From contig OZ281494.1 in the NCBI GenBank assembly GCA_965637545.1, positions 8,556,001-8,620,000 of the forward strand: DNA of 64,000 bases. Reading direction: 5' to 3'. The notes under the pieces are model-generated. The model was given only the letters and a program-made list of their open reading frames with translations. It was not told the DNA's origin and searched no databases. Positions within the stretch are counted from its first letter, which is position 1. The number at the start of each line of letters is the position of its first letter. This DNA is from Phallusia mammillata (taxonomy: Eukaryota). The position numbers and the translations under genes are program-made. Shown in pieces: positions 321 to 57,156 of the stretch.

Positions 321-3300
321 GACGATGCCGTGGAGGGTGGCAATCTCTGCCCGAGACAGCATTACTGCAACTGTACGGACGGTTGTGCTGTAGCTGAACC
401 ATGCTTCACTGGAATGTACACTAATGAAACCGGACAGGCCGAGGTAGGCAAAAAGACCTGTCGATTTATGGCTTATTATTTCTTTGTTCAGTCCTAAGTG
501 ATCTTGGTTCTCGTTTTTTCAAAGAAACGACTTTTTATGGCTTCTTTTATATGTAAAAAAAAATATTTGAGCGAAAAAAACGCCTTGTGGTGCGAGATTT
601 TGGTAAATTATTATTTTTTCTGTTCATTGGCACATTGTATTTCACTTAAAACAACGTCTTAAATCTATGCAAATTTGTAACTATTTTGTAAAGTTTATTG
701 ATAATAGTGCATTTACTTCTCTTTTTTATTCCCTTTTTTAAATGATTTCTATTTGATGTAGTGTTTCAACAAGATTAAAAACATTGGATTTTTTGTACAA
801 TGCAAAATAATATTGCAGAAAGCAGGGGGAAAATGGTTGTCAACGTACAACATTTTGTGCGATTTTTTACACTTTATGAACACTTTCAAAGATTTTTGTC
901 GATCCCCGCTATAATCGGTTTCGATCGTTGCAAATGGCAACATTTTTTCAAATACCAAGCCCAACCCAAAAGAACAGCATAACCATCTTTAATCTTTTTC
1001 AGTGCATAAACTGTAGGGCGGGGTACTTCTGTCGGAGCGGAGAGGAGCCGAAACTTTGCAGTGAAGGTCATTACTGCACAGGAAGCAGTGGCACAGGTGC
1101 AATTGAAGATCGGACTTTGGAAGACGTCGAAAAAGCGTGTCCAGCTGGGACCTACTCTAACCGGACAGGACTTAGCAGTCCTATCGAGTGCACGACTTGT
1201 GACCCAGGGATGTACTGCCTTGCTGGTCAGAAGGAACCAAACGGTACAAATAAATTATATGTACTTGTATGTAGTGGAGGGATTAAAAAATTTTTGTCAG
1301 CCGGTTCTATTACAAAAGTCATAGTTTTCAGCCGGTTCTGTTACAAAACGTGGCAGTAACCAGTAATGCTAACCGGTTCGCCGATCTCTCAAAATTTCGT
1401 GGGACTGTTCTCTAGAACCGGTGCGAACCAGTGCGAACTGGCTGATTCCCACCACTGCTTGTATGTAGTGATGGAAAAATAACTTGGTTTGTGGCTTTCC
1501 GGAGCGTTTGGCAAAAAGTGTTGTACTGTACTAGGAAATTCTACTAACGTAAGATTTTAAATCACAAAATTGTTCCAATTACTGATGGCGCAAAGGGCAT
1601 TGGTGAAAATTTAGAAGCAAAATCGTGTGAAAATGCCGACGTGTAAAGGCTGTTTGGGCTGGGGTATAAAAATACCAACAGAACTAACTTCAAAACTTAG
1701 TTACTAACGTTTAATTGTTTTCCTGTTTTTATGTTAATAGCTTTACCGTCCTTCAATTGGTAAAAGCATCACGGTGCCATGGAAGACGCCAGTGCGGACA
1801 AAATGTTTTAAATCTTAAAAAATGTTTAGTTATCTGCTATTTTTTAGGCACAGTTCAAAGTGTAAAGTTGGAATTGTTTGCTTCACAGATGTCATCCACA
1901 TTTTATCTTATCTGATCTCACACAAATTCTGTTTTATCTCAGGCAATATTTCCGCAACCTATTATTCCGAGGGAGCAGCCACCACGCCGACCCCCGTAAC
2001 AGGGAGCTGCAACGATCCAGTAGATCCTTTGAACGCAACCGCCACACCAAGGTCTTACGAATGTGGACGTTGCCCGAGAGGTTATTACTGCGCCGATGGC
2101 AACAAAAAAACTTGCCCCAAAGGAACTTACGGACCGGATGTTCCTATTCAATATCAGACAGCTTGCGTTGACTGTGACCCTGGTTTTTACTGTGACCAAC
2201 CTGCATTGCCTGGCGTACAAGGGCCTTGCGACGAGGGGCATTTTTGCAACGGTGGTTCAGAGGTGTCCAATCCAGACGGCTCCAACGGCTGGGGTGGCGA
2301 ATGCACTCCCGGTAACTTTTGCCCTCAGGGATCGTCCGTCGAACAGCCCTGTGAAGCAGGCAGCTTTGCCAATGTGTCCCGCAAGGCATTATGTGACCCG
2401 TGTCCAGCGGGCTTCTACTGCGAGGAAGGTGCCGTACGACCAACTGAATGCCCAGAAGGCGGTTACTGTCCCGATAATACCAGCGATTTGACGATTAAAC
2501 TCTGTCCCAAAGGAAAGTATAATAACATCACTGGTGCGAAAACGGACGCGAACTGCTTGGATTGTCCGCTGGGTAAGTTTGAGTTACATCTTACATGCAA
2601 AAAAACACAGGTTTGTTTTGTAGAAGATAAAATGCCTCGTCAAGGGGGTTTGTCTAAAATAATACTTTAAAGTTTAAACGTTTTAACTTTTAACATGGGG
2701 GCGAGAATTTGCTAAACGATTTCACTACTTTGGTCTGTTTGTTTGCCTTGATTTATCGAACTTTAGTTTGTTTTCAACTGTTAGCCCTTTCTATTTTATA
2801 AGATTGTCTGATTTTTACTGAACTGATTTTAACCTGGAATTATATATTTTCCAACTTGTGATATTAGTTTGCTTTAGAGTTGATTTAAAAAACATACGCA
2901 TTATAATTAAACTTAGAACCAGCCCGTTTTAGATTTTACATTTTTTTTACAAATCTCTCATAATTGCGACTCATTATTCACAACTATTCAAATTATTTAG
3001 GTTGGTACTGTGAAACAGCTGGTCTTCCATCTCCAACTGACTTGTGCGACCCTGGCTACTACTGCAGCGGTGGTTCCCCGGCTAAGCGACCCGCTAGTGG
3101 CGCGTCATACGGTGGTCAGTGCGTGAAGGGTCAGTTCTGTCCAGCGGGAGCGTCCGCCCCCCAACAGTGCTCACCTGGGACTTGCTGTGACCAGGACAGA
3201 CTCGGAGAGCCGAATAAAAATTGTAGTATTGGATTTTACTGTGCTGGTGGGGCCACAACATGTGAACCGACTGGCTCGGATAGTACAGGTGCGTTATGAA

Positions 3301-44300: not shown

Positions 44301-47300
44301 ACGCTGAAGCTTCAAACAAAATGCGACAGAAAGAAAAGAACGCCGTCGCTGCGGTGGTGACGTCAGGTGATGACGTGCCCCTCGACAAGCTGGTGCGTGA
44401 CGTACTGCTTCCACGTCACTTGCGCGAAATGGCGAGTCTCTCTGACCGTCTACAACGGGAGATGGAAGCCACAAAGAGCAAAGCAAAAGCCAAGGTGGGT
44501 TGGACCAAAGAAAATAAAAATCGAAGTATAATTGTGCATATTAGGGCAAGGAAATGTAATAGATTGGGACAAACGTTGTTTTAAGCTTTATTATATTATT
44601 TTTTATTCTGTTCGTGAATCAAAAGGATTGGAACTGTGTATCTATTAGTGGAAATGTAAGGCCTGGGGGATTTTTGTATCATATTTAAATGTAGACCTGG
44701 GGGATCTTTTTATCATATTTAAAAAACTGGCCACATAAAAAAAAACGGTTTAAGCAGAAGAATATAGAATAATTCTTGCTATTTAACATTTATAAAAAAA
44801 AATCGAGGAAATTAATAAAGGTGTCGTCTAGACGTTTAAATTGTTTCCGGCATGACAAGTTTGTGTTTTCAGGCGGTTTCATTCCACGCGGATGTGGCAA
44901 AAAATTCCATGGAAAGTTTTCACCTTTTTTTGTAGTACCAGGAAAAAAATCCTAAAAACTTCCCCACGAGTCTTGGCACTGATAAATGATTTACGTTTAA
45001 GTTTCGGTATGACGTCATAAAAAGTACAATGACGTCATATTTCTGTTCTCTCCCAACTTGCGCTATTTTTTGTAATCGTGTATTCGGATTACGTGATTCC
45101 AGTGTTGTTTTTCACTCAGGCTTCCGTCGAACGAACTGAGATGCGCGACAACATACTGACTCAGCACGAGGAGCAGGTCAAGGAGTTTTTGCTGAGTCAC
45201 GCCGGTGAGCCAGCGGGCAAAGTCATGAAGATGAAGAAAAAACTTGAAGCGAAACAAGAGAAAGGTAGGAAAATCTGCGTTTTTGCACGCTTTGTTCAGC
45301 AATGTAATTTTGTTTCTGTTGTAAAATTATGGCAAAATCGGTGGTAGAAATCTGTTGACACCACTAAAACGTTACTGAACTACTTTAGGTGTTCCCTGCC
45401 AAATAAACAGCGCTGATCGAAAAGGGTGTTTTAGGAGAGCAAATAAAGTCTTTTCAATGAAACTTCGCCTACAAAATTTGTTGGTTCCAGTTTTCAACCA
45501 AGTAAATTGAAAAAAATATGATCACTGCAATAGGTTCAATTTTCTCTGATTGTCCAAAGCAGTGGTTCCTTATCTTTAGCGACCAATTTCTCTCATTACA
45601 ACTAAAGCATTTCATTTCTTCCAAATATACTACAAAGTAGATGCCAAACCATTTGACTATTTGAAATCGGATCGTTTATCAACTTTACTGGTCATGTTCC
45701 CATAGCTTAAGTGTCCATTTACAAACCACATGTGCAAGTTAAAAGAGATTCCTTGGGTTTGTAGTAAATTGAGACTCCTTGTTGTGCAGAACTGGCCGAA
45801 TTTGACAAGGAAACCGAAGTGATGATTGCAACAGCTGTGAAAGCGGCTTGTGCATCACTGGCAATCGACCAAGCGGAACGCAAACTGGAATTGCGCGAAC
45901 AACATTTGAAGGAGTTAGCCGATACCATGAGAAGCCTGAACCCGGAAGAGGCAAGATGACGTTGTTGCTATAAAAGTGTCGACATACAGACATTTATATT
46001 GCAGGAACAATTGTTAATTACATGAAAATCCATAACAAACAAGTTTTTTTGTACGATTAGTTTCTGTGCTCTCAAAATTTTTATTTTCTTGTTATTGGTT
46101 GGGGGGAAAGGGGGGGTACAAAGGTCAAAATACGTCACTTTATCATCTCTTTTCAATTTGCCTAATTTTACCCTATTTTTCATTTTTCGTATTGGTTTGT
46201 CGTTAGCGATATAAAAAACATTTTCTGGTATTAATTAAACTTCTCAGGCCCGAATCGTCGTAAAAAACACATGCTTAAATCAAATCAAACACATTGTCAG
46301 CAATACATGCCATCATCACAATTACAATAGGGTTTGCACGGCGACGTAGAAATCGAAGATGAAAAACGCGAAATATTGAGATAAGATACGAAATGTAATT
46401 TCCTTAACCTAAACTTACTAAAAAAATAAATTTATATCAGATGAGTAAAATAGAAACCGTTTTTAATGTACTTTTGTGATTTTCTCTTATTTTGCTCGTC
46501 TCATGCAGGCATTGATGCACAAATACGGCGAAGAAGCTGCTTTCGCGGCGGATGAAGCCAGGAAATTCCGCGAACAGAAGAAACAGGAGATTGACACAAA
46601 GATCCAGCAGTTGAAGAGTGAGAAGAGGAAGAAAGAGAAAAAAGGTGGCATCCGGACTTTTGACCTAGTTTGGTTATATGAATTATTTTGTATTAGCTAA
46701 AAAGCTTCTGTAAGCATGAACTTGCTATAACAACATTAAAATTTTACCTTACCGAAGTTTTCTCAAACTGTGTGTCGTGAGAGATTTCCAAATGTGTCGG
46801 AAAATAATCCCTATCTTAAAGTACAAACATTCCCTGGTGTTTTAGGACTTCATCACAAAATACTGGTTTGCATGACAATGTTTCAAATCTCATAGTTTTG
46901 TTATTGGTAATAAAAAGCATCCTTGTCCACCAGAATAAAGTGAAAAATACCTTTTACACCAAAGTATAAACAAGATTTGTTGCAAAAAAAAGAATATAAA
47001 AGTTGACGTAAAGTAAGACTTATGACAACAAAAATAAACTAATGGCATCGAAACGAATTCATTTTCGCTGTAGCGAACAAACACATCGCCGATGAAGTGG
47101 ATGCTCTCACTAGGGAGCTCTCGGACACATCCATAAGGATCCAGCGGGAGGAGGATCAGAGGTTGCAGAAGAGCGCGGAGTCGAGCATGAAAGATGCGGA
47201 GCGCAGGGAGCAGGAGATCCTTGCCTCCGATCTCACACAAGATGAAAAAGATAAACTGCTGAAGGAACATCATGAAAGCGTCAAAAAAATTGAGGTAATA

Positions 47301-50300
47301 TGCTAAGGACGTGTTGTCGCATAATGGTTGGGGTTTGGTATTTAAGTTCTGAAAGATACCCGTAAAACACTTACAGCGTTTTTTGCATATTGTTTTGGAA
47401 AAGAGATTCCTAATTTTATCGGTGGGTCGGGTATTTTGTTAAAAAAAGCTTTGTTTGAACTTAAGTTTATTAAAACATTGAGTGATTTGTCATTTTGAAT
47501 CTATGGTTAATATTCCTCTATTGATTCTATTTTAATAAGCTACTGATAATGCTGTTAAGGCGAAATATATATGTCTAAAAATCTTACGGACAAATAACTG
47601 TTCGTTTTTTAACGTAAATCTGCTGACCAGAGTTATCCCAGTAATCATCTACCAAGCAACGAGCTTATAAGTTACGTTAAACAGATAAAATGCAATGACA
47701 AACTTTGGTATCATAGAAATATACGTCTATACACATAAATATTTACTTGAAAAACGCAAGAAAAGAGAAACATTTTGGCGCTAGCTTAGTGTGAATTTAA
47801 AACATCGCAAAGCCATTAATCGGTAAAATTTTCCATCTAACTATTTGTCGCAACATACAACATCTATGGAAATACCCTCATAATGATGTAAGTAGCCGCC
47901 TATGTTTACATGATATTGATTCAATGAATCACGAACTCATGTGAGGAAATCACCATGAAACATCGATCAAAACCTTGAGAAATGACAAACTGGAGTTGTA
48001 ATTCAATTTTTGTCTGTCGAAATTTGTTTTGGGCGTTTTCAAAAATCCTTGTTGGTAGGATTTAAAACCAGATAGTTTTTTCTAAATATAACCTTAAAAT
48101 TTGTCGAAAACTCGCTTTAAGCATGATCAGCTTCCGGTAAAAAAATTCCAAACTTCGTTCTTCGCGCATTTCTTTATGACGCAACAATAGAAATATGTTA
48201 GGTGGAAGGGCGGTTTTGAGTCAAATATGACCGTGTCTATTCTATTGATCACAACTTCTCAAGCGAAGCCAAGCAAAAAACGTAAAGATTTTTTTAGACG
48301 TTTTAATCAATGGTTATGTATATGAACTGTCAACACCTATTACGTGCCCACCCACACAACGTACAAAAATATTTTTTTAACCAATTGTGTTTCTTTATCA
48401 TTTCTATTTTCATTAAATCGGAGAATACGTAATATGGCAAAAATAGCCAGAGAAATAAGGTTGAAAACGCGTTTGTGTTGATTTTAGTTGACATTTAAGG
48501 TTCTTAACTTTCGTAACCGTATTTGATAAAATCGTCGCTGAATTAATCGCATTTATCATGCAAACGTTTTAGAGGTTGAAGCTGGAACCTATGTGTGACA
48601 GAATAATACATCGAGTATATACTCTCAATCCGTCAGTTACAAAAATCACGAAATTCTTACTTGATCGTGCAAAAAAATACAGTTTGGTTAATCACTACCA
48701 AACTTCAAATGGAAATTGGTGGTAAACCGTAACATAGTAAATGACCTTTTAACCGGTTGGCATTCGAACACTTGACTTAATAACCCATGTTTTTTTCCGT
48801 TTTTTTAACGAAACTGTTCAACAATGATAATTTAATGACGTGGCAATAAAAATATAATTTGGCTTTATTTTTTGATACTTATCATCCAAAACAAACAACA
48901 TCAGTTTAATGGTAAAAATAACGGCCCAAATAGACGTAAAAAGCGACATGCTTGATATCACTGATGATGGCATGAGCATTTGCCGAAACGTTTGAACAAT
49001 AAAGCATGTCGCTTTTTACGTCTATTTGGGCCGTTATTTTTACCATTAAACTTATGAACAGATCCGTATATAGTGTTTCAAACAACATCATTTTTTTATT
49101 CAGGCAAACCTTGCAGCTGAACGTCAGCGCTCCAAAGATGAGCTGAAGAAGAAATTGGAGGAGAGACGCAGAAGGAAACAAGAAGAGCTTAAGTCGAAAG
49201 CGATGAGCAAACTAGACGCCGAAGAAGCGGAACAGATGATCAAGATCGTGGAAGACGGAAAACGAGATATGGAAAAGACGGAGAAGATGTTGCTCGCCAC
49301 ACAGGAAGTTGTCAGGTGGATTAAGAAGCCTTTAAAATTGTACCATTTTAAAACGTTTTATAAAATGTACATGATTGGGTTTAAGGAATTGGTAGTAGTC
49401 GTATTAACACAATTTCTTTTCATTCAAACTACCCACCGACTGGTCCCACCAACGTTTCCCCCCAGGTCCCAGTCGTGTTATACTCACAGTGCGCCAAACT
49501 CACTCTCTTATGAGCTCCCGCCGTATAACGCATCATAATACGGTGTAGCTGCAGTGCGTTTAGCCTTGATCCACTCCACTGTTTTGCGCTTCATAACGTT
49601 TTAACGTTGCGCTATTTCCGGCTTGGTGATTGTTTTAGTGCAACTGTGTCGCTATGTGTTATTTCACCAAGCGAAATAAACTTAACTCGACTTTTCCGCT
49701 TTGTATGCTAATTCAACATTTTGAATGATTCTTTTTGTCACAGCTCACGTGACGATAAAGATGACAGCTCGGACAGTTCTGACTCCGACGAAGGGGAATC
49801 CCCGACCTATGCACAGACGAATATTATCGCCGGAATACCGATGATGGCAGGTGCTGTGCCCGCTGAATGGAATACAATGCTACAGAATTCTGACTTCTTC
49901 AAGGTAAACCACATAAAATGCTACAGAATTCTGACTTCTTCAAGTTAAACCACATAAAAAACTAGTTGAGCCGTCGCTAATGAAAACAGTATGTGGTATT
50001 TAACACCGACTGGAGTTGCGTTTTTGCTGAGTAGTGTTAAGAGGTCAGAATTTGTTCTTACCTTTTTAAACGTTTTTGCAAAAGGGTGCTTGTATAACTG
50101 TAAAACACGATTTAAACCGGTCTGTTTTACTGAGTTAAACGGTTTTGTGATGTAAAGCGTCCTTGTAAACAATCATAGAAAAAAAAACGTTTAAACGATT
50201 GAGATCTTAGAGAATCAAATGTTTTGTGTTGAAAATAAGGAATAAACAGAAGAAATTGCAACCAAATAGATGTTTGGTTGACATTAATGTCCCCTTTTTG

Positions 50301-53300
50301 GTTTGTCTTTTCTACAGCAACTACAGGAAATGGAAGAACGACTTCAGGTCCATCTGAAACCGGGCGATGCAAAAGTCAAGGGATCAACATCGACACCCTT
50401 CATTGACATACAGGTGCGTTTGTTAAAAGGACTATACACAAACCAGCGACCGTACAACCATACATAATATGTCCCCCAGATGTGCATTCAAATATACAGT
50501 GTGCCACATGGCAAGCAAACGTATAAGCGTTATATTGCAAGTTTTAGTGAACACATCGCCTGTTGTTAAAGATATCCTTTGTTAAAGATAAAGATATCCG
50601 ATATATGCGACTGTCACTAGATAAAATGTTATGCGTGTTCTAGCATTAAGCAATGACAACTAATTTTGTCACTGAGATAAAAAATTACGAAGTGATTATT
50701 TCGTGCAGGATGCACAATGGATGTTGCAAGGGGAACTTGTGCCGGCTGAGATCAACCAACTCACACCGAGTCAGTTCGTCGTTTACAGATTCGGAGTGTT
50801 TGTTGCAAGAATGCTGCAGAATGTACTGGAGGCAAGTACTGCATTGTGACTCCTAAACCCCGTTTGTAAAAAACTGAAGGAATTGCGAAAGATTATTTTT
50901 CAACAAAACGACAAAAAGCTGCTTTATTTATTTAAAGTGCTTTTTGTGAAAAAAAGAGACTTACAATAGAAACATTAACAACCGCAACATTATGTTTTTA
51001 AACAACTTTTTTTTTGTTAATATAAGACCAAACCTTGTCCAACACGTTGTAACTTTAAGTCATTTCAGTGTTTGGGTCAAAAAAGTCACGAGCAATTACA
51101 AAAACCTTTTCACCATCCCCTACCTTTATTCCTCTTTAAATATGTTTACATTTCATACTTACTGATGTGCAAAAAGTATTATGACCATCTCACGACCCAA
51201 GCCTCAAACATAAAAAAATGTAACAATTTCGAGGCCACGTCGTGGCCGCACTGGAGTCTGCCCATGTCAAAATGGCTGCAGGTTTAACGAGTTCGATTCC
51301 ACAATACCACATAACACAACACACATTGTGGCATTGCAGCACCATGATCATTGATAGAAGTGAATCCCAAATCTAAAAAAGGTTCCTTGTACGAATACTT
51401 ACTAATCCTTAAACTGTATCTGTTACATCTCCACGTTCAGTTTCGCATGATTAACTTTTATTCCCCGTACTATGACGTAACAATCGCCATGTGCGTAACA
51501 GTACAATTTGAAGGCTATTGTCGGTATTTTGCAATGATTAGTTCGTTTTACTGTACAACGTGGTCGAGTGAGTGGACTTTACTACTACTACATTAAGTAA
51601 ATTCGTTTGTTTTTACTTAATGCAGTAATAGTTTGTTTGGGTAGAATTGAACCACCATAGCGCGACCCATTTTTTGAACCTGCGCGACCCACGTTTGGGT
51701 CGCGACCCATACTTTGAGAACCACTGCCCTAGCTCATAACATTTAAACGTTGAGTAATCGACTTCTAACATTTAGACTGAGGAAGTCACTCTTCTTCTCG
51801 CTAACAACCTTCCCGCAAACAACTATGATCGCAACGCATTCCGCCAGTCATTCTTTTACCAACGGGCTCGTCGTATGCTCTTTGTACGAGCCGATCGCCT
51901 CACATCGGTTGGTGACTTCGTAATGGTGGTCATCCATTGCATGGCACACATCGCTGTGGGTCAACTGGACGATGATTCTGATCCATATTTCCTCCGTGCA
52001 TTTTACAAGGTCAGTAGCGTGCCATATTAGTACATTAATTACTCTACAAGGCCACAAAATGCATTACTTTTCGATTGCCTTAAACGAAACATTACTTGAA
52101 AATTTAAACCTTTCTGCATCGAACGTCCAACAACTTGGTCCAAACAGGTCCATTTAATAAAACCTTTCCGACAATTTAGTGTGTAATATTATTTAATTGG
52201 AGTGGGTTCGAATCCCACCACATCAGGCTAGATTTTTCTAGTCAGTTCTTTGCCGTATGGAATGCTTGGAGATTGGTTGATTCGGTATAACGCCATCAAT
52301 AGGCCTGGCGTGAAATTTCACTGAGAAGAGTTTATTGTTTGCTAAAGCGATGCTTCCCAGGGGCCGGCATGTCAGTTTTCATGTTATATATTGTTATATG
52401 TTCCATTTATGACTGTGAAAATGAGATGAACGCTGGGGTTAAATTGAAGGAGTTTCTATGTCGAACAAAATTGAAAGCTTCGGAGCATAGTCAGCTCGAC
52501 CAAATTGTAATACCATGTCTGTTGTCTTTTTCATGTTGTACTTGTTGCTATAGGTACTGTGATGTCACGACATTACAATAAATCCTGTAAATTTGTGCGT
52601 CATGTCCCAAACTATAATAAGCTTAAATGCACCCAGCCAATAAACAATAAGTAAGCTGCTAATTGGGCACACTGTTTCGACCCGTAAGGCAGCATTAGTG
52701 GAGCTGGTAAACAAAACATAGGCCGGATTGGCTAAAGTATAGACACCTAACCGCTTGGTTGGGAGTAAAATTAAAGCGAATAGTGATTTTCGCGTCGTTA
52801 CTTGAGGTCTTAAACGGCTCACTTCGCTTGCCATATTTCTAACGCCTTAAACACTTTACAGGCGCTCAAAGCCTCCTGCGAGGACATGTTCTTCTCACGT
52901 GCTCGCGTTGCCAGCCAATCAGCTTCGAGCAATGGCGGCGCGTTGGACGTGGCTCCACTCGAAACGGCTCAAGGATTGGAAACGAAACTCCACGTGCTGG
53001 ATGATTTAATTGACGTCAACGTCTTCACGCCAGTATCAACAAACTTCACCAAACAAGTATGTGATTCATAAAAAAGTACAAAGGGGAATTCCCACCGGCG
53101 GTGGTTTACGTGCATTGATAAATCTCCGTGTTAAGTGCATGGAAACTTAAAAACTGTGCTGTTCATTGAGTATACACAATGCAATGATTTATGTGGTATG
53201 ATGGGGTTAAGAATTTTTAAGCCGTGTTTTTTTTAGAAACGATGGCTAATTAACAATTTTATTAAGATTTACGAAGCATCTACCTTCCGCCAAGTATGTG

Positions 53301-56300
53301 TTTGACTGGTCGTATTAGATGCTTCATATATCTTTTTCCCGTAATCGTCATTAAGGTTTCATACCTTATGAATCACATAGGTCCCGATAATTCGTACCTT
53401 CAAATTGCCGATGTCGATTTTGTGTGGTGATCAATCGATGGTAACGGTTTTAGGCGTTTTCTTCCACTTAGCCTTGCTTAGTGCGACATTTTTCTGCAAT
53501 TTCGTTTTGTATGGAACCTAAAACTAGTTCTTGGATTCTTGCAAGAGTTTTTCACTATTTAAGCTTGTGCTTCACTGAATTGCGATAACACTTCGTACAA
53601 CGAGCTACCAATGGAGAAAAAACAGCGACAATGGGCCTCATTTTGCGGTGGCCATTTCAATTTAGGTGACGTAACATGACGTAAGCAATAAGGAGGACAT
53701 ACCAGTCCTAAGCATTTGGTTCGCATAAAATCAACAGCAGAGTGCGTCAAATGGGACCAGCGGAAATTCGATTTTTAAACAATTCTATTCCCTTGTTGAA
53801 AATAAGGTTTATGACGTCGTTCGTGTTTGACGCAACTGTGTGTTTTGACTGGACCATGGTTGACGTAAAGTCGAAAACGAAAAAGCGATTTGGATTGTAA
53901 AGTTTTGTTGCCATTAGTCTATATTGCAGAGTTTACTTAAACTGTCATTGCAAACATGCCCAAGTCGTTTTGTTCGGAAAAAATTACCAACGCCTTTCTC
54001 AAAAAAAACATGACGTGTTTTTAGGGAGTACATATGCATTTGAATATGTCTTTGTGGTTTTGTTTTTCCAACTCGTTTCTTATAAGAAGCAGTCCAAGTT
54101 AGCATGTAATTTTTTAATCGTTTTCTGACGTCTCTTCAAAGTAAAACGTTGCGGTGTACCTTTTATGCGCCAACCTACACTGAGGAATGTGAACTCAAAC
54201 TCCGACAAATCGCAAAGCAACTTTAATAGGCTTTCAACTGAGGGCTTCTTCATGACTGATTTGTATTACACCATGCAAGACAATTCAATGCAGCCTTGGG
54301 CCCAATTTGCAATTTTTGTGATTCTGTTGACATAATAATGCGATGGGCAAAGAATGTCAAAAACGTATTGTGTTTCCAACGCTTTTGGCAAGATGGTTGC
54401 GCGAAAAAAGTTGATAATTAAGATTTACGCCCTAAACAAGGAAAAGGCATTTCTGATGGGTAAAATGAGTGCAATGCGTTTTCGCCAGGCCAGTAAAAAT
54501 GGCCAGTAAAAACCAACGCAGTTTTCGCCAGGCCAGTAAAAATGTTACGAACTATCGATACACCACCTGTACCGTTGTCTGACACGAAAAAGTGTTCTCT
54601 ACAAATTGACCACATTCTTGCATCCCACACTCCCATGTAAGACTCGACAGATTGAAAGGTTTATTGTCAATTTGCTATGTATCCGCAAATTTACAACAAC
54701 ATCATACTTTTTGCGCAGAGCGTGCAAAACCGACTTGCGCAATATGGAAAGTTCCGGAACGACGACACACTGCGACATCTTGTGGCAAAAAGAGTAAAAC
54801 CAAATACCGATGACGTGTTCATGGCTAATAGGTTACGTCAGCTTCGCAATTCGGATGGAGTCATCGAAAGGTAAACTAAATTTTGATGTTGTATAGTTTG
54901 TATGTTCATCACAGGGGTGCACAACCTGTGGCCTGCGAATATGGAATTAGAATGTGTAACTATTTTTTTGCAGTGCAAGCGAACAAATCAAATTCACCCC
55001 TGGTTTATCACATAACAGAGAAGCTTTAGTTATGATAGTATTCGTTTGGCGTTTAAAAATGTCTTAATAACGGTTACAAATCAAATGCGGTCAAAATAAC
55101 GACACCGTACACTTGTAAATTCTCAAAAGTAAAACGTCTTATATATACTTGTTATCGTTTGTTTTATCGTAGGGGCAATTTTTCACTGTCAAAATTTTAG
55201 ACAATCAATCGCGTTTCCCAAAAATAGGCTAGCGATATTTTACCAGCAGCATCTACAAAGCTCGTTTGACCACATCTTAAACATTATGCATTTTGAACAG
55301 GTCACCGGCTCCTGTGAACATGCCTCGTCGGCTCACGGACGCTCGGACGGTTATTCGAGGTCAGGTTGCCAAGTTGCAGGAGCGACTTGATGCTGTCAAT
55401 CACCAACTGATGAAATGTGTACAGACTGAAAGCGATCTGGCCAATACAACTGATAACAAGTCAAAAGGTAACACTTGTCATAATGTATTTACAAATAGAG
55501 CGTTGCTATTGTTTCAAAGGGTTACACGACTTCGTAAGGGTTATGCGATTGTAGTTGCTAGTTGTGTTTGCGGATAACAAGTCAAAAAGTTACACTTTAA
55601 AAGCCATGGTTTTTCTACAAATAGGGTGGTGTTATATTTTCCAACTGTCTGTAAAGGTTATACGACTGTAGTTGCTAGGGCTTGCTAACCGTCTTGGTAT
55701 GAGAAACGGTCCGGTTTGGTAGTTCAATATTTACGAAGTACCGATTTAATTTTTACAAAGGGCACTGTCATTGAAATAGTTATATTTGATCTTTTCAAAA
55801 CAGCACAGTCGAAACAGAGTTTCCAAATTTGGTGTATGTGTTTTATAAAAATAGCTTAGGCCTACTCCACAGGGTGGCGCGTGGGTAGACGTTTGGTATT
55901 TTTGCCTTTTAGATTCACAATCTTTGCGTCACATATTTTTAGCCCACATTTGTAAGTGTTTGGTCGGTTGATAAATTAAGCAGTGAGCGACTTTTTTATT
56001 TTAAACGGTTCCGTTTCCTCCTGTTAAACAAACAAAATGCCTGTATGGGATAGAAGATGACGCAAATTACGTCACTGCGTGGTTCCCCCAAATCCCAAAG
56101 CTGTGATGTAAATGCGTGGCAAGCCGGGAACGGACAATCATGGAGTAGGCTATTATCGAGATTATGTTTGCTCATCGAATGTTAACACTCGGCGCTCCAG
56201 CGTGAGATAGTTAAGGGAGTTTCTCCTTATAAATAAGTTCCCCACGTACTGCGCTATTTACCCTGCGGTTACGTAACCTTGGTACGCAGGCCACAAGCCT

Positions 56301-56663
56301 TAAAAAATTACCCTCATGTCAAACTATGTTGATTTTGTTCTTTATTATATTCGAACCTTGAAGGTAGTCTTTTTATGATAAAGGCAAACTTTTATTGCCA
56401 AGTCGTATAGGTGGAAACTGGGAAGGCATCGTCTTTGTGTATAACTACAAAATAGTGCCTCGGTGTGGTAGTAACATGGTTTTACCGAACACGTTTTTTA
56501 ATGTTTTTATCATTTTTTGACAAATAAAGTCAAATATTTATTTTTTGCAGGCCCGCCCCAGCAACTTCAGATAGCGCAACTGGGTGAGCGCAAGGAACAC
56601 CTGCTCAGTCAAGCGAATCACGCCCAATCCGAAATTGACAAGAAAAAACAGTTGCTTTCGTAA
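321..56663 (+). CDS. Giant Cys-rich (GCC2_GCC3/ephrin-receptor-like repeat) type-I transmembrane protein; multi-exon, 5'-partial; about 5,400 aa visible
   Basis: Hand-chained exons with phase-compatible AG/GT (four GC) boundaries: 321-443,1003-1243,1943-2572,3001-3288,3821-4063,4418-4579,5303-5471,5935-6113,6560-6715,7070-7299,7745-7982,8567-8794,9288-9452,9913-10072,10286-10392,10837-11001,11299-11456,11716-11906,12245-12369,13371-13532,14046-14201,14845-15024,15428-15544,15841-15990,16173-16480,16777-17017,17567-18157,18595-18721,19067-19186,19454-19595,20032-20209,20858-21103,21559-21845,22065-22182,22838-23020,23256-24540,24926-25065,25121-25378,25714-25950,26396-26686,27043-27354,27872-27982,28386-28576,29071-29316,30254-30420,31043-31161,31654-31795,32064-32277,32727-32914,33674-33879,34591-34868,35347-35487,35927-36071,36189-36325,36609-36741,37087-37239,37624-37809,37984-38277,38851-38984,39497-39758,40372-(gap),(gap)-40629,40744-40956,41365-41449,41906-42048,43536-43652,44258-44494,45120-45264,45790-45950,46509-46644,47074-47294,49104-49315,49744-49903,50318-50413,50709-50831,51776-52009,52862-53056,54719-54870,55301-55467,56551-56663 (ends ...KKKQLLS*, TAA 56661-56663). 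No in-frame stops in the spliced chain. The first exon begins at an acceptor with no start codon or signal peptide, so upstream exons lie outside the window. Confidence 0.9.
1272..1457. mobile_element. hAT-type MITE (186 bp)
   Basis: TIRs TAGTGGAGGGATT / GATTCCCACCACTG; exact 8-bp TSD CTTGTATG at 1264-1271 and 1458-1465; internal AGCCGGTTCT repeats. Confidence 0.8.
3563..3735. mobile_element. Two divergent SINE fragments (minus-strand 3' end and plus-strand B-box copy)
   Basis: 3563-3600 is the reverse complement of the SINE 3' end (GAAGGCGTTATAC); 3641-3735 has GTGGGTTCGAATCCC plus a degenerate body. Other SINE tails occur at 13066-13107 and about 31430-31455. Confidence 0.6.
4619..4932. 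mobile_element. MITE family A, diverged copy
   Basis: Collinear similarity to 12545-12945 (GGGATGTGCCAAAA...TGACGTCACAAAC...GATGCTCGGTACCGAGTACTC). Confidence 0.8.
6343..6409 (+). mobile_element. 5'-truncated copy of the same hammerhead retroposon with 13-bp TSD
   Basis: TCTTGTATAGGACGTCGAAACGTCGATTgTTTACAATAAAACTGCTGGAtGAGCAATACTT nearly identical to 20511-20571, but lacks CTGATGA. TSD CATTCCTATTTGG at 6330-6342 and 6410-6422. Confidence 0.8.
7581..7652 (-). mobile_element. tRNA-derived SINE head (minus strand)
   Basis: Reverse complement ...GCGAGTCCCGGAAAGACCCCTGTCGTGGGTTCGAATCCCACCATAGGCTA matches 30081-30130. Confidence 0.75.
12417..13209. mobile_element. Older TIR element (CAGGGGTGCACAACC ends) hosting a nested family-A MITE and a SINE fragment
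   Basis: Perfect 15-bp inverted repeats at 12417-12431 and 13195-13209; the same terminus recurs at 54912-54926; no clean TSD. Confidence 0.55.
12545..12945. mobile_element. hAT-type MITE family A, full-length copy (401 bp)
   Basis: TIRs TAGGGATGTGCC / GGCGCATCCCTA; exact 8-bp TSD GTTGCTAG at 12537-12544 and 12946-12953; subterminal GCTCGG/CCGAGC repeats. Confidence 0.9.
15663..15724. repeat. Intronic 28-bp perfect direct repeat
   Basis: TTTCTTCCATCACAATTTACCACAAGTT x2, separated by a short spacer. Confidence 0.9.
16130..16153. repeat. (AAC)n microsatellite just upstream of a splice acceptor
   Basis: About 8 AAC units ending about 19 nt before the AG at 16171-16172. Confidence 0.9.
20417..20575 (+). 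mobile_element. Short hammerhead-bearing retroposon copy with 13-bp TSD
   Basis: AAGCACTCAGTCT at 20404-20416 and 20576-20588 flanks a T-rich segment, the hammerhead and AATAAA. Confidence 0.75.
20493..20540 (+). ncRNA. Minimal type-I hammerhead ribozyme motif
   Basis: ATTATC-CTGATGA-a-GGCGTCTT(gtat)AGGACGTC-GAAA-C-GTC-GATTAT: 8-bp stem II with two G-U pairs, ACGT palindromic stem III, GUC triplet, stem I 3+2 bp; AATAAA at 20545-20550. Confidence 0.75.
21415..21452 (-). mobile_element. Fragment of the hammerhead retroposon (minus strand)
   Basis: Reverse complement reads GTCGACCTGTATAGGACGTCAAAACGTCGG; the catalytic boxes are decayed. Confidence 0.5.
22408..22682. mobile_element. MITE family A, 3'-truncated copy
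   Basis: CAGGGATGGGCCAAAACTGCAAATGTTCTGTTTGG...TTAGCAGGGCATGAATAT, collinear with 12545-12850. Confidence 0.8.
23256..24540 (+). CDS. Largest exon (1,285 bp) of the Cys-rich ectodomain
   Basis: ORF track 23204..24565; acceptor ttattcgacag|CT at 23255; donor GGAAG|gtatgt at 24541. Confidence 0.92.
24713..24860. mobile_element. MITE family B partial copy
   Basis: CAGTGGTCCCAAACC...ACGAATTCCTCCC...ACTTTACTGGTCATATTCCCAG, similar to 41037-41264. Confidence 0.6.
30061..30226 (+). mobile_element. tRNA-derived SINE, near full length
   Basis: A-box-like GCAGCTCAGTTGGTA; anticodon-like arm GAGTC-ccggaaa-GACTC; T-arm GTGGG-ttcgaat-CCCAC; no acceptor stem; followed by a tRNA-unrelated body ending GTATAACGCC...TGGCGTACT..GATT that is shared with other copies. 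Confidence 0.8.
30254..34703 (+). CDS. Juxtamembrane ectodomain, exons 45-51: non-repeat Cys domain, furin site, cupredoxin-like beta-sandwich
   Basis: Spliced translation: GQTSCLTCGAEATQ...CLCQVDNLDAICNLECR...NTTTTSRRRRSVSG...NPVICLALGDLMSFTVDNLNYPMYDVTNLYNTNENFDYGGFRTL...LFIYKFTEPGAYSFMHNTNSLKKFYVRVMEAGG. Confidence 0.8.
34230..34534. mobile_element. MITE family A, 5'-truncated copy
   Basis: ...CCCTTTCGAACACTA...TACCGAGTACTCGGGTTCTGGCTC...CCCATTCCTA, collinear with the 3' part of 12545-12945. Confidence 0.8.
34704..34778 (+). other. Single transmembrane helix coding segment
   Basis: WLLIGLLIAAALLVVIILIVALMLF followed by KK (positive-inside rule), within exon 34591-34868. Confidence 0.9.
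34779..39758 (+). CDS. Cytoplasmic tail I, exons 51-60: short helical/coiled-coil region, then [D/H]PxTG beta-hairpin repeats
   Basis: Translation includes EEELAEYERKKEELDIELERRR, then DPTTG, HPQTG, DPITS, DPRTG, DPTTG, HPVTG, SPVTK, EPDTE. Confidence 0.8.
40372..49315 (+). CDS. Cytoplasmic tail II: long E/K/R/Q-rich coiled-coil region
   Basis: Exons translate to e.g. RDKLLARLEARKKIQEELSKERAVAKQLR, EAREQKKQEIDTKIQQLKSEKRKKEKK-type runs and ELKKKLEERRRRKQEELK. Interrupted by the assembly gap. Confidence 0.8.
40405..40604. other. Assembly gap (200 N) inside coding sequence
   Basis: Exactly 200 N. The coding frames on either side (GPDAMAQGVSF / LTMEKGQQ) are not in frame across 200 nt, so the length is a placeholder. 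Confidence 0.95.
41037..41264. mobile_element. hAT/Charlie-like MITE family B, full-length copy
   Basis: CAGTGGCTTCTAA ... TTGGGGACCACTG termini; 8-bp TSD with one mismatch (TGTTAGTA / TATTAGTA). Confidence 0.7.
43409..43482. repeat. Intronic ~38-bp tandem repeat
   Basis: TTTGCT(T/C)GTTCAATTG(C/T)ACAGTTAAACTTACAGCTT x2. Confidence 0.9.
43870..43990 (+). mobile_element. Diverged copy of the hammerhead retroposon
   Basis: TGTCGCTGTTT...ATTACC-CTGATGAAGGCGACCTGAATATAGGACGTT-GAAG-CGTC-GGTTAA; the core has GAAG instead of GAAA. Confidence 0.6.
44652..44720. repeat. Intronic ~35-bp tandem repeat
   Basis: AAATGTA..CCTGGGGGAT.TTT..TATCATATTT x2. Confidence 0.8.
45560..45752. mobile_element. MITE family B partial copy
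   Basis: CAGTGGTTCC...TATCAACTTTACTGGTCATGTTCCCA...TTTACAAACCACATGTGCAA. Related partial copies at about 21145-21350 and 40170-40265. Confidence 0.6.
48904..49078 (+). mobile_element. Hammerhead-containing fold-back insertion (Penelope-like-derived) with 12-bp TSD
   Basis: Perfect 51-bp inverted repeat 48903-48953 / 49002-49052 encloses the hammerhead. Direct repeat CAAACAACATCA at 48892-48903 and 49079-49090. Confidence 0.75.
48958..48995 (+). ncRNA. Minimal type-I hammerhead ribozyme motif (Penelope-like/retrozyme type)
   Basis: TCA-CTGATGA-t-GGCA(tgagcatt)TGCC-GAAA-CGTT-TGA: conserved CUGAUGA and GAAA boxes, 4-bp stem II, palindromic stem III (AACGTT), GUU cleavage triplet, 3-bp stem I; AATAAA at 48998-49003. 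Confidence 0.75.
49744..56663 (+). CDS. Cytoplasmic tail III: acidic Ser linker, globular alpha/beta domain with HCMAH motif, terminal coiled coil
   Basis: SSRDDKDDSSDSSDSDEG; TEEVTLLLANNLPANNYDRNAFRQSFFYQRARRMLFVRADRLTSVGDFVMVVIHCMAHIAVGQLDDDSDPYFLRAFYK; terminal exon GPPQQLQIAQLGERKEHLLSQANHAQSEIDKKKQLLS*. Confidence 0.8.
49876..49957 (+). repeat. 41-bp tandem duplication spanning the exon 49903 donor
   Basis: AATGCTACAGAATTCTGACTTCTTCAAG[G/T]TAAACCACATAA x2, with a single difference. Confidence 0.95.
51661..51727. mobile_element. hAT/Charlie-like terminal fragment
   Basis: Ends in TTTGAGAACCACTG (reverse complement CAGTGGTTCTCAAA) with GGGTCGCGACCC subterminal palindromes; a similar terminus CAGTGGTTCTCAAC occurs at 26056. 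Confidence 0.5.
52201..52312 (+). mobile_element. tRNA-derived SINE, 5'-truncated
   Basis: B box GTGGGTTCGAATCCCACCA followed by the body ...GTATAACGCCATCAATAGGCCTGGCG. Confidence 0.75.
54478..54544. repeat. 24-bp direct repeat with an internal partial third copy
   Basis: GTTTTCGCCAGGCCAGTAAAAATG at 54478 and 54521; GGCCAGTAAAAA between them. Confidence 0.85.
55452..55684 (+). repeat. Degenerate ~121-bp tandem duplication spanning the exon 55467 donor
   Basis: GATAACAAGTCAAAA(G/A)GT(A/T)ACACTT at 55452 and 55573; also shared TACAAATAG and GGTTAT.CGA.TGTAGTTGCTAG. Confidence 0.8.
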
Positions 56664-57150: not shown

Positions 57151-57156
57151 AATAAA
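57151..57156 (+). terminator. Candidate polyadenylation signal of the giant gene
   Basis: First AATAAA downstream of the stop codon (about 490 nt 3' UTR). Confidence 0.5.

What the first reader, a model, noticed from the sequence alone, without database searches (positions are those of the whole stretch)
321..56663. Orphan giant receptor-like protein: multi-thousand-residue Cys-rich rod, one TM and a 1,500-aa non-kinase tail
Seen: more than 3,400 aa of ephrin-receptor-like Cys repeats (still open at the 5' edge), a furin site, a single TM, and a tail with hairpin repeats, coiled coils and a zincin-like motif but no GxGxxG/HRD/DFG kinase motifs. Established: the repeat type occurs in SCUBE, SVEP1, ELAPOR and Eph proteins and in very large protist surface proteins such as apicomplexan cysteine-repeat modular proteins. 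None of the characterised animal members I know has this architecture. Inference: it belongs to a poorly studied class of giant GCC2_GCC3 membrane proteins, possibly a ciliary/flagellar, gamete-surface or mechanosensory filament with an intracellular scaffold.
Basis: partly seen in the sequence, partly recalled or inferred. Interest (0 to 1): 0.7.

Follow-up and report, generated by a model that had tools for sequence, protein, structure and literature searches.

The report
Giant cysteine-rod membrane protein, ancient family
This is one real, very large sea-squirt gene for a membrane protein with a huge cysteine-rich outer rod and a long inner tail ending in a dead protease-like module; it is not an orphan, because unstudied relatives run from single-celled flagellates to mouse and zebrafish.

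Summary
Observation confirmed. On the + strand my exon model gives 69 exons (4,571 aa, no stop) from 321 to the gap and 19 exons (977 aa plus stop at 56661-56663) after it. Parts: about 3,590 aa of ephrin-receptor-like Cys repeats, a 345-aa stalk with RRRR|S, one TM, beta-hairpin repeats, a 556-aa charged coiled coil and a C-terminal HCMAH domain. No kinase.

Gap: transcript contigs splice 39758>40372 into the gap and out of it at 40605-40629>40744, with open frames at both edges. They carry at least about 960 nt absent from the window, so the gap hides exon sequence. No contig bridges it. Single fish, frog, ray, Fabomonas and Chromosphaera proteins align colinearly to exons on both sides, so one gene is by far the likelier reading.

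The repeats continue about 24 kb upstream (about 1,640 aa more); the protein is probably over 7,200 aa.

"Orphan" is wrong. The C-terminal exon finds 420 relatives with the same architecture (Fabomonas 7,499 aa, Chromosphaera 7,076 aa, echinoderms, hemichordate, amphioxus). A tree places the window gene as sister to vertebrate Gm32742 / si:dkey-103g5.4. All are "uncharacterized"; I found no functional paper.

The C-terminal domain models as a zincin fold (Wss1, Z 8.9), but the catalytic Glu is absent in about 215 members. Function is inferred only: a surface rod tethered to a non-enzymatic cytoplasmic scaffold.

The parts
321..29316 (+). Cys-rich ephrin-receptor-like (GCC2_GCC3) repeat exons: 52 modelled exons, about 3,594 aa. 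The largest exon is 23256-24540. The array continues upstream of the window.
   Evidence: Stop-free Cys-rich segments; exon chain without stops; weak PF07699 hits; motif counts. About 8 micro-exons are doubtful. No RNA was laid on this part.
30254..32277 (+). N-terminal stalk exons: 30254-30420, 31043-31161, 31654-31795 and 32064-32277. They carry non-repeat Cys patterns.
   Evidence: Colinear tblastn hits from fish, frog and annelid proteins; exon model.
32727..32914 (+). Stalk exon with the polybasic RRRR|S site (32745-32759) and the start of the conserved membrane-proximal domain (NPVICL).
   Evidence: RRRR lies at a similar place in starfish and amphioxus and RRR in a crinoid. The site is absent in urchin, hemichordate, annelid and vertebrates.
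33674..33879 (+). Membrane-proximal ectodomain exon (YPMYD..LYNTN..FDYGGF..EPGAY).
   Evidence: 19 homologue HSPs. The NPxxC motif lies 122-132 aa before the TM in animal members and two protist members.
34591..34868 (+). Exon with the single transmembrane helix (34707-34778, LLIGLLIAAALLVVIILIVALMLF) and the KKYGW..DDYSSK juxtamembrane motif.
   Evidence: 24 homologue HSPs.
35347..37239 (+). Cytoplasmic helical region: exons 35347-35487 (EFWDYE), 35927-36071 (VDLESF..ILTKQS), 36189-36325, 36609-36741 and 37087-37239.
   Evidence: tblastn from vertebrates, starfish, Fabomonas and Chromosphaera; exon model.
37624..39758 (+). Beta-hairpin repeat block (DPxTG / HPxTG motifs): exons 37624-37809, 37984-38277, 38851-38984 and 39497-39758.
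   Evidence: Alignment A2, 36-49% identity to bichir P0060. All-beta model with pLDDT 72.5. The 38984>39497 junction is seen in RNA contigs. Protist members align here too.
40372..40404 (+). Start of an exon that runs into the assembly gap (..GPDAMAQGVSF).
   Evidence: Joint 39758>40372 (GT..AG) in the RNA contigs of X2 and X4. The X2 contig goes on for 873 letters beyond 40404.
40405..40604 (.). Assembly gap (200 N). It interrupts exon sequence and hides at least about 960 nt of transcript. Its letters were not sought.
40605..40629 (+). End of an exon that emerges from the gap (LTMEKGQQ), spliced to 40744.
   Evidence: Joint 40629>40744 in all four runs. The X2 contig has 960 further letters before 40605.
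40744..49315 (+). Charged coiled-coil block, 556 aa. Exons: 40744-40956, 41365-41449, 41906-42048, 43536-43652, 44258-44494, 45120-45264, 45790-45950, 46509-46644, 47074-47294 and 49104-49315.
   Evidence: Junctions up to 44494>45120 are seen in RNA contigs, with GC donors at 41450 and 42049. Composition. Amphioxus P0011 aligns to 45789-45953.
49744..50413 (+). Acidic Ser/Asp-rich linker exon (49744-49903) and a short exon (50318-50413) that lead into the C-terminal domain.
   Evidence: Exon model.
50709..53056 (+). C-terminal Glu-less zincin-like domain: exons 50709-50831, 51776-52009 (HCMAH 51935-51949; DDDSDPYF 51968-51991) and 52862-53056.
   Evidence: 420 relatives. Alignment A1. Model of the amphioxus member of A1, pLDDT 86.9. 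Wss1 Z 8.9 and other zincins. No Glu at the catalytic position in about 215 members.
54719..56663 (+). Last helical exons 54719-54870, 55301-55467 and 56551-56663, with the stop codon at 56661-56663.
   Evidence: Read by eye against the C-terminus of amphioxus P0011; tblastn found no hit beyond 53056. Phase-consistent chain with one terminal stop. AATAAA at 57151.

Best explanation
What it is (shown). A single gene of about 81 kb with more than 110 exons lies on the + strand. It encodes a type I membrane protein of probably more than 7,200 aa. From outside to inside it has:
- a cysteine-rich rod of over 5,000 aa, heavily N-glycosylation-sequon-rich, built of ephrin-receptor-like repeats;
- a conserved stalk with a polybasic RRRR|S site and a membrane-proximal domain of about 125 aa;
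- one transmembrane helix;
- a helical juxtamembrane region and a block of beta-hairpin repeats;
- at least 0.96 kb of exon sequence hidden by the assembly gap;
- a charged coiled coil of about 556 aa;
- a C-terminal domain of about 170 aa with a zincin fold, in which HExxH reads HCMAH.

It is the sea-squirt orthologue of the uncharacterised vertebrate gene known as Gm32742 (mouse), RGD1562811 (rat) and si:dkey-103g5.4 (zebrafish). It keeps the full architecture also seen in Fabomonas and Chromosphaera. A second, hairpin-less paralogue lies on another chromosome.

How it most likely works (inferred, about 35-40%). It is not an enzyme-linked receptor.
- The rod is a long, stiff, glycosylated surface filament. 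A furin-type convertase may clip it at RRRR|S.
- The tail dimerises through the coiled coil.
- The coiled coil holds a catalytically dead zincin module tens of nanometres below the membrane. The module keeps H-x3-H...D, so it may still bind metal and a peptide, and it would dock a cytoplasmic partner.
- The protein would thus tether or signal between the cell surface and a cortical structure.
For: One gene:
- An open exon chain on both sides of the gap: 69 plus 19 exons with no internal stop.
- Spliced RNA contigs run into the gap at 40372 and out of it at 40629>40744, in frame.
- Single proteins of fish, frog and ray and of Fabomonas and Chromosphaera align colinearly to exons before and after the gap.

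Family:
- 420 hits to the C-terminal exon, many of them giant proteins.
- Names and sources are all 'uncharacterized'.
- The order Cys-rod, TM, long tail, HxxxH is conserved.
- The tree gives amphioxus + (window + vertebrates) at 94/93 and 91/80, and a separate clade B at 99/93.
- A paralogue lies on contig C2.

Zincin fold without Glu:
- Model pLDDT 86.9.
- Wss1 Z 8.9 over 108 of 128 residues, with abylysin, SPRTN and aminopeptidase N catalytic domains below it.
- Foldseek and the ESM Atlas give the same kinds of fold, and so do language-model features.
- The Glu position is C, A, S or T and never E in about 215 members; H, H and D are nearly invariant.

Topology:
- N-x-S/T sequons and Cys lie on the N-terminal side, and KK follows the TM.

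No enzymatic domain:
- Pfam finds nothing in any tail.
Against: - No contig or read was shown to bridge the gap, so a single transcript is inferred, not seen.
- Exons in the Cys-rich part come from my own splice model, with about 8 doubtful micro-exons and no RNA check.
- The 5' end and signal peptide were not located.
- The functional reading rests only on architecture. There is no localisation, partner, expression tissue or phenotype for any member.
- The polybasic site is not conserved in all members.
- A Cys at the Glu position could support some unknown chemistry.
- Zincin-fold Z scores of 7-9 are only moderately above the background the tool reports.
- The structural model is of the amphioxus homologue, not of the window protein.
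Confidence: 0.8

Rival explanations
1. Two genes merged by the reader at the gap: a rod + TM + hairpin gene that ends in or before the gap, and a separate cytoplasmic coiled-coil + zincin-like gene that starts in or after it.
For: No contig bridges the gap. Three TGACG (CRE-like) motifs, including a full TGACGTCA, lie in the 114-nt intron just before 40744 and could mark an internal promoter. Short database entries that hold only the tail exist, for example amphioxus P0011 at 874 aa.
Against: Exons abut both gap edges in open frames and are spliced to their neighbours. At least 15 full-length proteins from protists to mammals carry both halves in the same order. The short entries look like fragments.
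Confidence: 0.04
2. The C-terminal domain is an active, unconventional metallo- or thiol-dependent peptidase, with Cys replacing the general-base Glu. It would cleave the tail or a partner on activation, which would make this a proteolysis-coupled receptor.
For: The fold is a zincin fold with H-x3-H and a nearby invariant Asp. Cys at the Glu position is the commonest state, about 141 of 215 members, and holds in all chordates sampled.
Against: Many members have Ala, Ser or Thr there, so no single catalytic residue is conserved. No SprT-like, WLM or other peptidase Pfam model matches, and no solved structure matches by sequence.
Confidence: 0.08
3. It works as apicomplexan and ciliate cysteine-repeat modular proteins are reported to work: as a sensor or organiser at sites of regulated exocytosis, rather than as a surface tether.
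For: It has the same repeat type, giant size and wide protist distribution. The comparison is from memory of that literature and was not tested here.
Against: This family has a single TM and a tail of 1,350-2,500 aa. As I recall, CRMPs are multi-pass with short tails. No sequence link outside the repeats was seen.
Confidence: 0.1
4. A decaying pseudogene or an assembly artefact: collapsed or expanded repeat exons that do not encode one protein.
For: The exons are highly repetitive, there is an assembly gap, and my model has several doubtful micro-exons.
Against: 88 exons chain without one internal stop. Spliced transcripts exist. Size and order match Fabomonas (7,499 aa) and Chromosphaera (7,076 aa).
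Confidence: 0.02

Closest known systems
Vertebrate uncharacterised proteins: mouse Gm32742, rat RGD1562811, zebrafish-type si:dkey-103g5.4, and many LOC entries in frog, lizard, ray, bat and warthog
   Same: Orthologues by tree. They align colinearly across stalk, TM exon, EFWDYE/VDLE helices, hairpin block and C-terminal HCxxH domain. The hairpin block is 36-49% identical.
   Different: Vertebrates keep only 1-2 Cys-rich repeats and are 1,200-2,300 aa in total. No vertebrate sequence aligned to the charged coiled-coil exons. The sea-squirt protein keeps a rod of over 5,000 aa.
Giant protist members: Fabomonas tropica EP00163_P011852 (7,499 aa) and Chromosphaera perkinsii Nk52_evm8s371 (7,076 aa)
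   Same: The order of parts and the overall size match. A Cys-rich region of about 4,550 aa is followed by the TM, the QVDLE helix, the hairpin block, a long tail and H-x3-H about 260-290 aa from the end.
   Different: The Glu position holds Ala or Thr instead of Cys. Sequence identity outside the conserved blocks is low.
Invertebrate 'clade B' giants: Asterias LOC117306372, Anneissia LOC117121631, Diadema, Glandiceps LOC144439946, Branchiostoma belcheri Bbelb_413740, Owenia; also the sea squirt's own second copy on contig C2
   Same: They share the Cys-rich rod, the stalk with NPxxC, a single TM, a coiled-coil tail and the Glu-less zincin-like end.
   Different: They form a separate clade with 99/93 support. 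No match to the hairpin exons was found. Their TM segment is almost invariant (IIGMLAFLAAC..), unlike the window's.
Wss1 / SPRTN (WLM and SprT-like zincin proteases) and minigluzincins
   Same: The fold of the C-terminal domain matches: Wss1 5xbn Z 8.9 with rmsd 3.2 over 108 residues, abylysin 7.4, SPRTN 6.5. The helix carries H-x3-H.
   Different: The catalytic Glu is absent throughout the family. No Pfam model or PDB sequence matches. The domain sits at the end of a membrane protein's tail, not on a DNA-repair protease.
Other ephrin-receptor-like (PF07699) repeat proteins: Eph receptors, SCUBE, SVEP1, ELAPOR, apicomplexan CRMPs
   Same: Only the type of Cys-rich repeat is shared.
   Different: There is no kinase, CUB, sushi or multi-pass region. 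The tail and stalk match no known family. The comparison with these proteins' architectures is from memory.

Membership tests
Unnamed Gm32742 / si:dkey-103g5.4 family (giant Cys-rod, TM, Glu-less zincin tail) | C-terminal domain with H-[CAST]-x-x-H followed by DD..P.F, 250-350 aa from the end | tested here: met
   Exon 51776-52009 (HCMAH, DDDSDPYF) gives 420 hits, best 82% identity. See also alignment A1 and the motif census.
Unnamed Gm32742 / si:dkey-103g5.4 family (giant Cys-rod, TM, Glu-less zincin tail) | Single TM preceded by a conserved membrane-proximal domain (NPxxC[LIV] 122-132 aa before the TM), with Cys-rich repeats N-terminal to it | tested here: met
   NPVICL lies in exon 32727-32914 and the TM at 34707-34778, with the exons between them aligning to homologues.
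Unnamed Gm32742 / si:dkey-103g5.4 family (giant Cys-rod, TM, Glu-less zincin tail) | Colinear alignment of one homologous protein to exons on both sides of the gap | tested here: met
   Fish P0041, frog P0064, ray P0029, Fabomonas P0050 and Chromosphaera P0069.
Hairpin-bearing 'type A' branch (vertebrate orthologues) | Beta-hairpin block after the TM, and placement with vertebrates in a tree | tested here: met
   Alignment A2. The tree puts window + vertebrates at 91/80 inside a 94/93 clade with amphioxus P0011.
Ephrin_rec_like / GCC2_GCC3 repeat (Pfam PF07699) | Match to PF07699 at or above the gathering score | tested here: inconclusive
   Three window exons score 19.1-21.8 bits against a cut-off of 23.1. 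Repeats are split by introns, and exons were searched singly. Crinoid P0123 scores 28.6 bits, and starfish and hemichordate entries carry PF07699.
Zincin metallopeptidases (WLM / SprT-like / minigluzincin) | Zincin fold: helix, three-stranded sheet, active-site helix, C-terminal helix | tested here: met
   The model was built from alignment A1, whose first sequence is amphioxus P0011 and which includes the window exons. pLDDT 86.9; Wss1 Z 8.9, and nearly all top rows are zincins.
Zincin metallopeptidases (WLM / SprT-like / minigluzincin) | HExxH with the catalytic Glu | tested here: not met
   The window has HCMAH. Glu is never present at that position in about 215 members.
Zincin metallopeptidases (WLM / SprT-like / minigluzincin) | Sequence match to a curated peptidase family or a solved peptidase | tested here: not met
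   No Pfam family for any of the 26 members of A1. No PDB sequence match at E up to 10.
Receptor tyrosine kinases (Eph type) | Cytoplasmic protein kinase domain | tested here: not met
   No Pkinase hit in the tail exons or in whole homologues.
Apicomplexan cysteine-repeat modular proteins (CRMP) | Several C-terminal transmembrane helices (as I recall the family) | tested here: not met
   One hydrophobic segment in the window and, besides an N-terminal signal-like segment in some, at most one in the full-length members tested.

The most novel reading that the evidence does not exclude
The gene exposes an undescribed family of giant surface-rod membrane proteins that spans the eukaryotes. Its architecture has been kept from ancyromonads and ichthyosporeans to tunicates, and two paralogue types exist in animals. 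Three of its conserved modules have no Pfam model and no solved relative by sequence: the membrane-proximal stalk, the cytoplasmic beta-hairpin array and the Glu-less zincin end. Vertebrates, including mouse and zebrafish, keep a rod-less orthologue, so its unknown cell-biological role could be tested at once by knock-out.
Probability: 0.6. Interest if true: 0.7.

Novelty: new variant of a known kind. Interest (0 to 1): 0.6.

Why it matters
This protein family is as large as the biggest known surface proteins. It is conserved across very distant eukaryotes and present in mouse, rat and zebrafish, yet I found no name, no Pfam model for its tail and no functional paper.

The sea-squirt gene links the two forms. 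It has the giant rod of the protist and invertebrate members, and it is orthologous to the short vertebrate proteins. That shows the vertebrate 'predicted genes' are remnants of an ancient giant receptor-like protein.

It also adds a clear case of a zincin fold kept for a very long time without its catalytic Glu. That points to a conserved binding role.

For genome annotation, the case shows that a nominal 200-N gap hides about 1 kb or more of coding exon.

Tried and rejected
- Pfam on 20 tail and stalk exons gave nothing beyond weak PF07699 hits and chance hits.
- ESM Atlas features gave nothing usable for the hairpin exon. For the C-terminal exon they gave SprT-like leads only.
- An EVC2/limbin-like tail was my first guess. 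No Pfam EVC2_like hit appeared, so I dropped it.
- I first concluded that the hairpin block was specific to tunicates and vertebrates. That was wrong: Fabomonas, Chromosphaera A, Diphylleia and several unnamed protist proteins align to the same exons.
- The hairpin model found no solved fold. Best VIA Z was 3.8, on the terminal helix only; Foldseek TM was about 0.13 with Kelch and hairpin-repeat proteins at low probability.
- The stalk profile found no PDB or Pfam relative. Protist and hemichordate tails have no Pfam domain.
- Word searches from crinoid and Percolomonas C-terminal regions added a few animal giants but no new named protists.
- Literature searches for the gene names and for repeat-type terms gave only two gene-list mentions.
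- My first splice models mis-phased the gap and several tail exons. I corrected them with RNA joints and homologue hints.
- The joined spliced protein was never searched. All searches used single exons by reference or database proteins. Inside scripts, exons were joined in two places only: to check open frames and composition, and for the three C-terminal exons in the tree.
Full report
**Setting.** The window is G000:C1:8556001-8620000 of a 240-Mb genome. G+C is about 0.39. The + strand carries dozens of short open segments rich in Cys, Gly and Pro with motifs such as CPAGTYC; the - strand shows no such series of repeat-bearing segments.

**The gap, tested first.**
- The 200 N lie at 40405-40604.
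- Four runs of the same species held about a fifth to a quarter of the words of 35300-40400, which is roughly the exonic share. Their contigs are spliced, so they are RNA.
- Laid on 38800-44700, they give these joints: 38984>39497, 39758>40372, 40629>40744, 40956>41365, 41449>41906, 42048>43536, 43652>44258, and on to 45120.
- So an exon begins at 40372 and runs into the gap. Its frame reads ..GPDAMAQGVSF and continues phase 1 of exon 39497-39758.
- Another exon leaves the gap at 40605-40629 (LTMEKGQQ) and joins 40744 in phase 0.
- The X2 contig that enters the gap is 1,421 letters long, and only 548 of them lie on the window. The contig that leaves it is 1,613 letters long, and 960 of them lie before 40605. 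Neither contig reaches the other side.
- The gap therefore hides at least about 960 nt of mature transcript, and up to about 1.8 kb if the two contigs do not overlap.
- I did not try to recover those letters. No contig bridges the gap, so continuity of the transcript is inferred.

**Gene model.**
- I wrote a small splice-chain finder using codon log-odds and splice matrices trained on the clear exons. I refined it with the RNA joints and with tblastn hints from homologues.
- The curated chain has 69 exons (4,571 aa, no stop) from 321 to the gap. After the gap it has 19 exons (977 aa) ending at the stop at 56661-56663.
- About 8 micro-exons in the repeat part are doubtful, and that part has no RNA check.
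- Regions by size: Cys repeats 321-29316, about 3,594 aa; stalk 30254-33879, 345 aa; TM exon 34591-34868, with the TM at 34707-34778 and KKYGW after it; cytoplasmic exons before the gap, 539 aa; after the gap, 977 aa.
- The repeats continue upstream of the window to about -24,228, which adds about 32 exons and 1,640 aa. Further upstream, exons with an alpha/beta-hydrolase-like HGGYW motif look like another gene.
- The gene thus spans about 81 kb, and the protein is probably over 7,200 aa.
- The joined protein was not searched. Every search used single exons by reference or database proteins.

**Not an orphan.**
- A full HMMER search with the 78-aa exon 51776-52009 found 420 proteins at E up to 0.001 and 142 at 1e-10.
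- Many are giants with the match 250-350 aa from their end:
  - Fabomonas tropica, 7,499 aa
  - Chromosphaera perkinsii, 7,076 and 6,410 aa
  - Diphylleia rotans, 3,948 aa
  - Percolomonas, 4,786 aa
  - the crinoids Anneissia (3,985 aa) and Antedon (4,701 aa)
  - Asterias, 4,536 aa
  - Diadema, 4,581 aa
  - Glandiceps, 6,496 aa
  - Branchiostoma belcheri, 5,521 aa
  - Owenia, 3,082 aa
- Vertebrates hold shorter relatives of 1,200-2,300 aa. These are si:dkey-103g5.4 in many fishes, LOC entries in frog, lizard, ray and skate, and mouse-type 'Predicted gene 32742', rat RGD1562811 and others in mammals.
- All are labelled uncharacterized or hypothetical.
- Full-text searches for these names found only two gene-list mentions and no functional study.

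**Shared architecture.**
- Most full-length members tested have the same order of parts: a Cys-rich region of 1,000-4,600 aa (only 1-2 repeats in vertebrates), one TM about 170-200 aa after it, a tail of 1,350-2,500 aa, and H-x3-H near the end. Diphylleia and two unnamed entries show no Cys-rich region, and no TM passed the threshold in Diphylleia and three others.
- Single proteins align colinearly to window exons on both sides of the gap:
  - fish P0041: residues 113-982 to 30254-39736, and 1579-1657 to 51785-52021
  - frog and ray likewise
  - Fabomonas P0050: 4805-5209 to 35924-38987, and 7190-7264 to the C-terminal exon
  - Chromosphaera P0069 likewise
- Together with the RNA joints, this makes two genes very unlikely.

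**Two paralogue types.**
- The same genome holds a second copy at C2:29.277-29.318 Mb. It has Cys-rich exons, the stalk motif and an HTMAH C-terminal domain, but nothing that matches the hairpin exons.
- I built a tree of the C-terminal domain with 35 rows and 165 columns, using IQ-TREE with LG+C20.
- It puts the window gene with vertebrates (91/80), inside a clade with amphioxus P0011 (94/93).
- The C2 copy falls with amphioxus P0252, a hemichordate, an annelid and echinoderms (99/93). For this tree alone, the three C-terminal exons were joined inside the script.
- I first thought the hairpin block was confined to tunicates and vertebrates. That was wrong: Fabomonas, Chromosphaera A, Diphylleia and four unnamed protist proteins align to the same exons at the same relative place.
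- So the window gene keeps a complete and apparently ancestral hairpin-bearing architecture. Vertebrates later lost almost the whole rod.

**The modules.**
- *Repeats.* Three exons give PF07699 hits just below the cut-off. Homologues pass it.
- *Stalk.* It has no Pfam or PDB relative. The NPxxC motif lies 122-132 aa before the TM in animals and two protists. A polybasic site (RRRR here, in starfish and in amphioxus; RRR in a crinoid) lies 18-50 aa before it, but not in all members.
- *Hairpin block.* The model built from alignment A2 is all-beta with short strands and a final helix (pLDDT 72.5). It finds no solved fold.
- *Coiled coil.* 556 aa, E+K+R 38%, P+G 2%. The amphioxus fragment aligns to one of these exons.
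- *C-terminal domain.* Alignment A1 has H, H and D nearly invariant, in the pattern H-x3-H-x8-D.
  - The model has pLDDT 86.9.
  - An all-against-representatives search gives Wss1 on top (Z 8.9, rmsd 3.2, 108 of 128 residues). Abylysin, Wss1 of S. pombe, jannalysin, SPRTN, YbeY-family proteins and aminopeptidase N catalytic domains follow.
  - Foldseek and the ESM Atlas give the same kinds of fold, and so do language-model features.
  - No Pfam model or PDB sequence matches.
  - At the place of the catalytic Glu, about 215 members have C (141), A (39), S (19) or T (12), and never E.
  - This agrees with the scan's separate note on 51776-52009.

**Interpretation.**
- Shown: one giant type I membrane protein gene that is expressed and spliced. 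It is orthologous to an unstudied vertebrate gene and belongs to a family found in very distant eukaryotes.
- Inferred: the rod is an extracellular filament. The topology follows from sequons and Cys on the N-terminal side and from the KK after the TM. The coiled coil dimerises the tail. The Glu-less zincin module and the hairpin array are binding modules, not enzymes.
- I put about 35-40% on this 'surface rod tethered to a cytoplasmic scaffold' reading.
- Rivals are an unconventional active peptidase (about 8%), a CRMP-like role in regulated exocytosis (about 10%), two genes (about 4%) and an artefact or pseudogene (about 2%).
As far as I recall, the named holders all have flagellated cells, but I could not build a proper profile.

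Noticed in passing
window 41450, 42049, 45951, 50832: Four GC-AG introns among the 18 introns of the post-gap tail, with donors GCGAGT, GCAAGT, GCAAGA and GCAAGT. The first two are confirmed by RNA contigs; the other two are predicted from homology and phase. That is far more than the roughly 1% usual for GC donors (a figure from memory).
   Followed up: partly
G000:C2:29277001-29318000 (+); loci L002, L010-L014: A second giant family member in the same genome. It has at least 21 Cys-repeat ORF pieces, the stalk motif, and a C-terminal domain with HTMAH instead of HCMAH. Nothing matches the hairpin exons. It groups with echinoderm, hemichordate and annelid proteins in the tree.
   Followed up: partly
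window 40690-40730: Three TGACG motifs within about 45 nt (ATGACGTAAT, a full palindromic TGACGTCA, and ATGACGCG). They lie in the 114-nt intron just before the acceptor at 40744. This looks like a CRE cluster and could be an internal promoter or enhancer; it remains unexplained.
   Followed up: no
window 40163-40248 and 41121-41206: A dispersed repeat (86 nt, 80% identical) lies in the introns on either side of the gap region. RNA contigs of higher depth (13-20) lie on 40967-41360, so the element or its relatives are transcribed somewhere in the genome.
   Followed up: partly
window 48892-49090 and 20404-20588: Other notes of the scan place hammerhead ribozymes here, in introns of this gene. 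Rfam found no family in the whole window at gathering scores. In both places it found no hammerhead match at E up to 1. Only generic hairpin-type matches far below threshold appeared at 48913-49096.
   Followed up: partly
about 27.4-29.8 kb upstream of the window (G000:C1:8526181-8528600; loci L008, L004): The upstream neighbour on the same strand has exons with an alpha/beta-hydrolase-like HGGYW motif. It appears to be a separate gene that ends before the first Cys-rich exon near -24.2 kb.
   Followed up: no
proteins P0123, P0247-P0252: The transmembrane helix of the hairpin-less animal clade is almost invariant from annelid to amphioxus (IIGMLAFLAACI.MLV.AVIV). That is unusual for a single-pass anchor and hints at a partner within the membrane. 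The window's TM is much more divergent.
   Followed up: no
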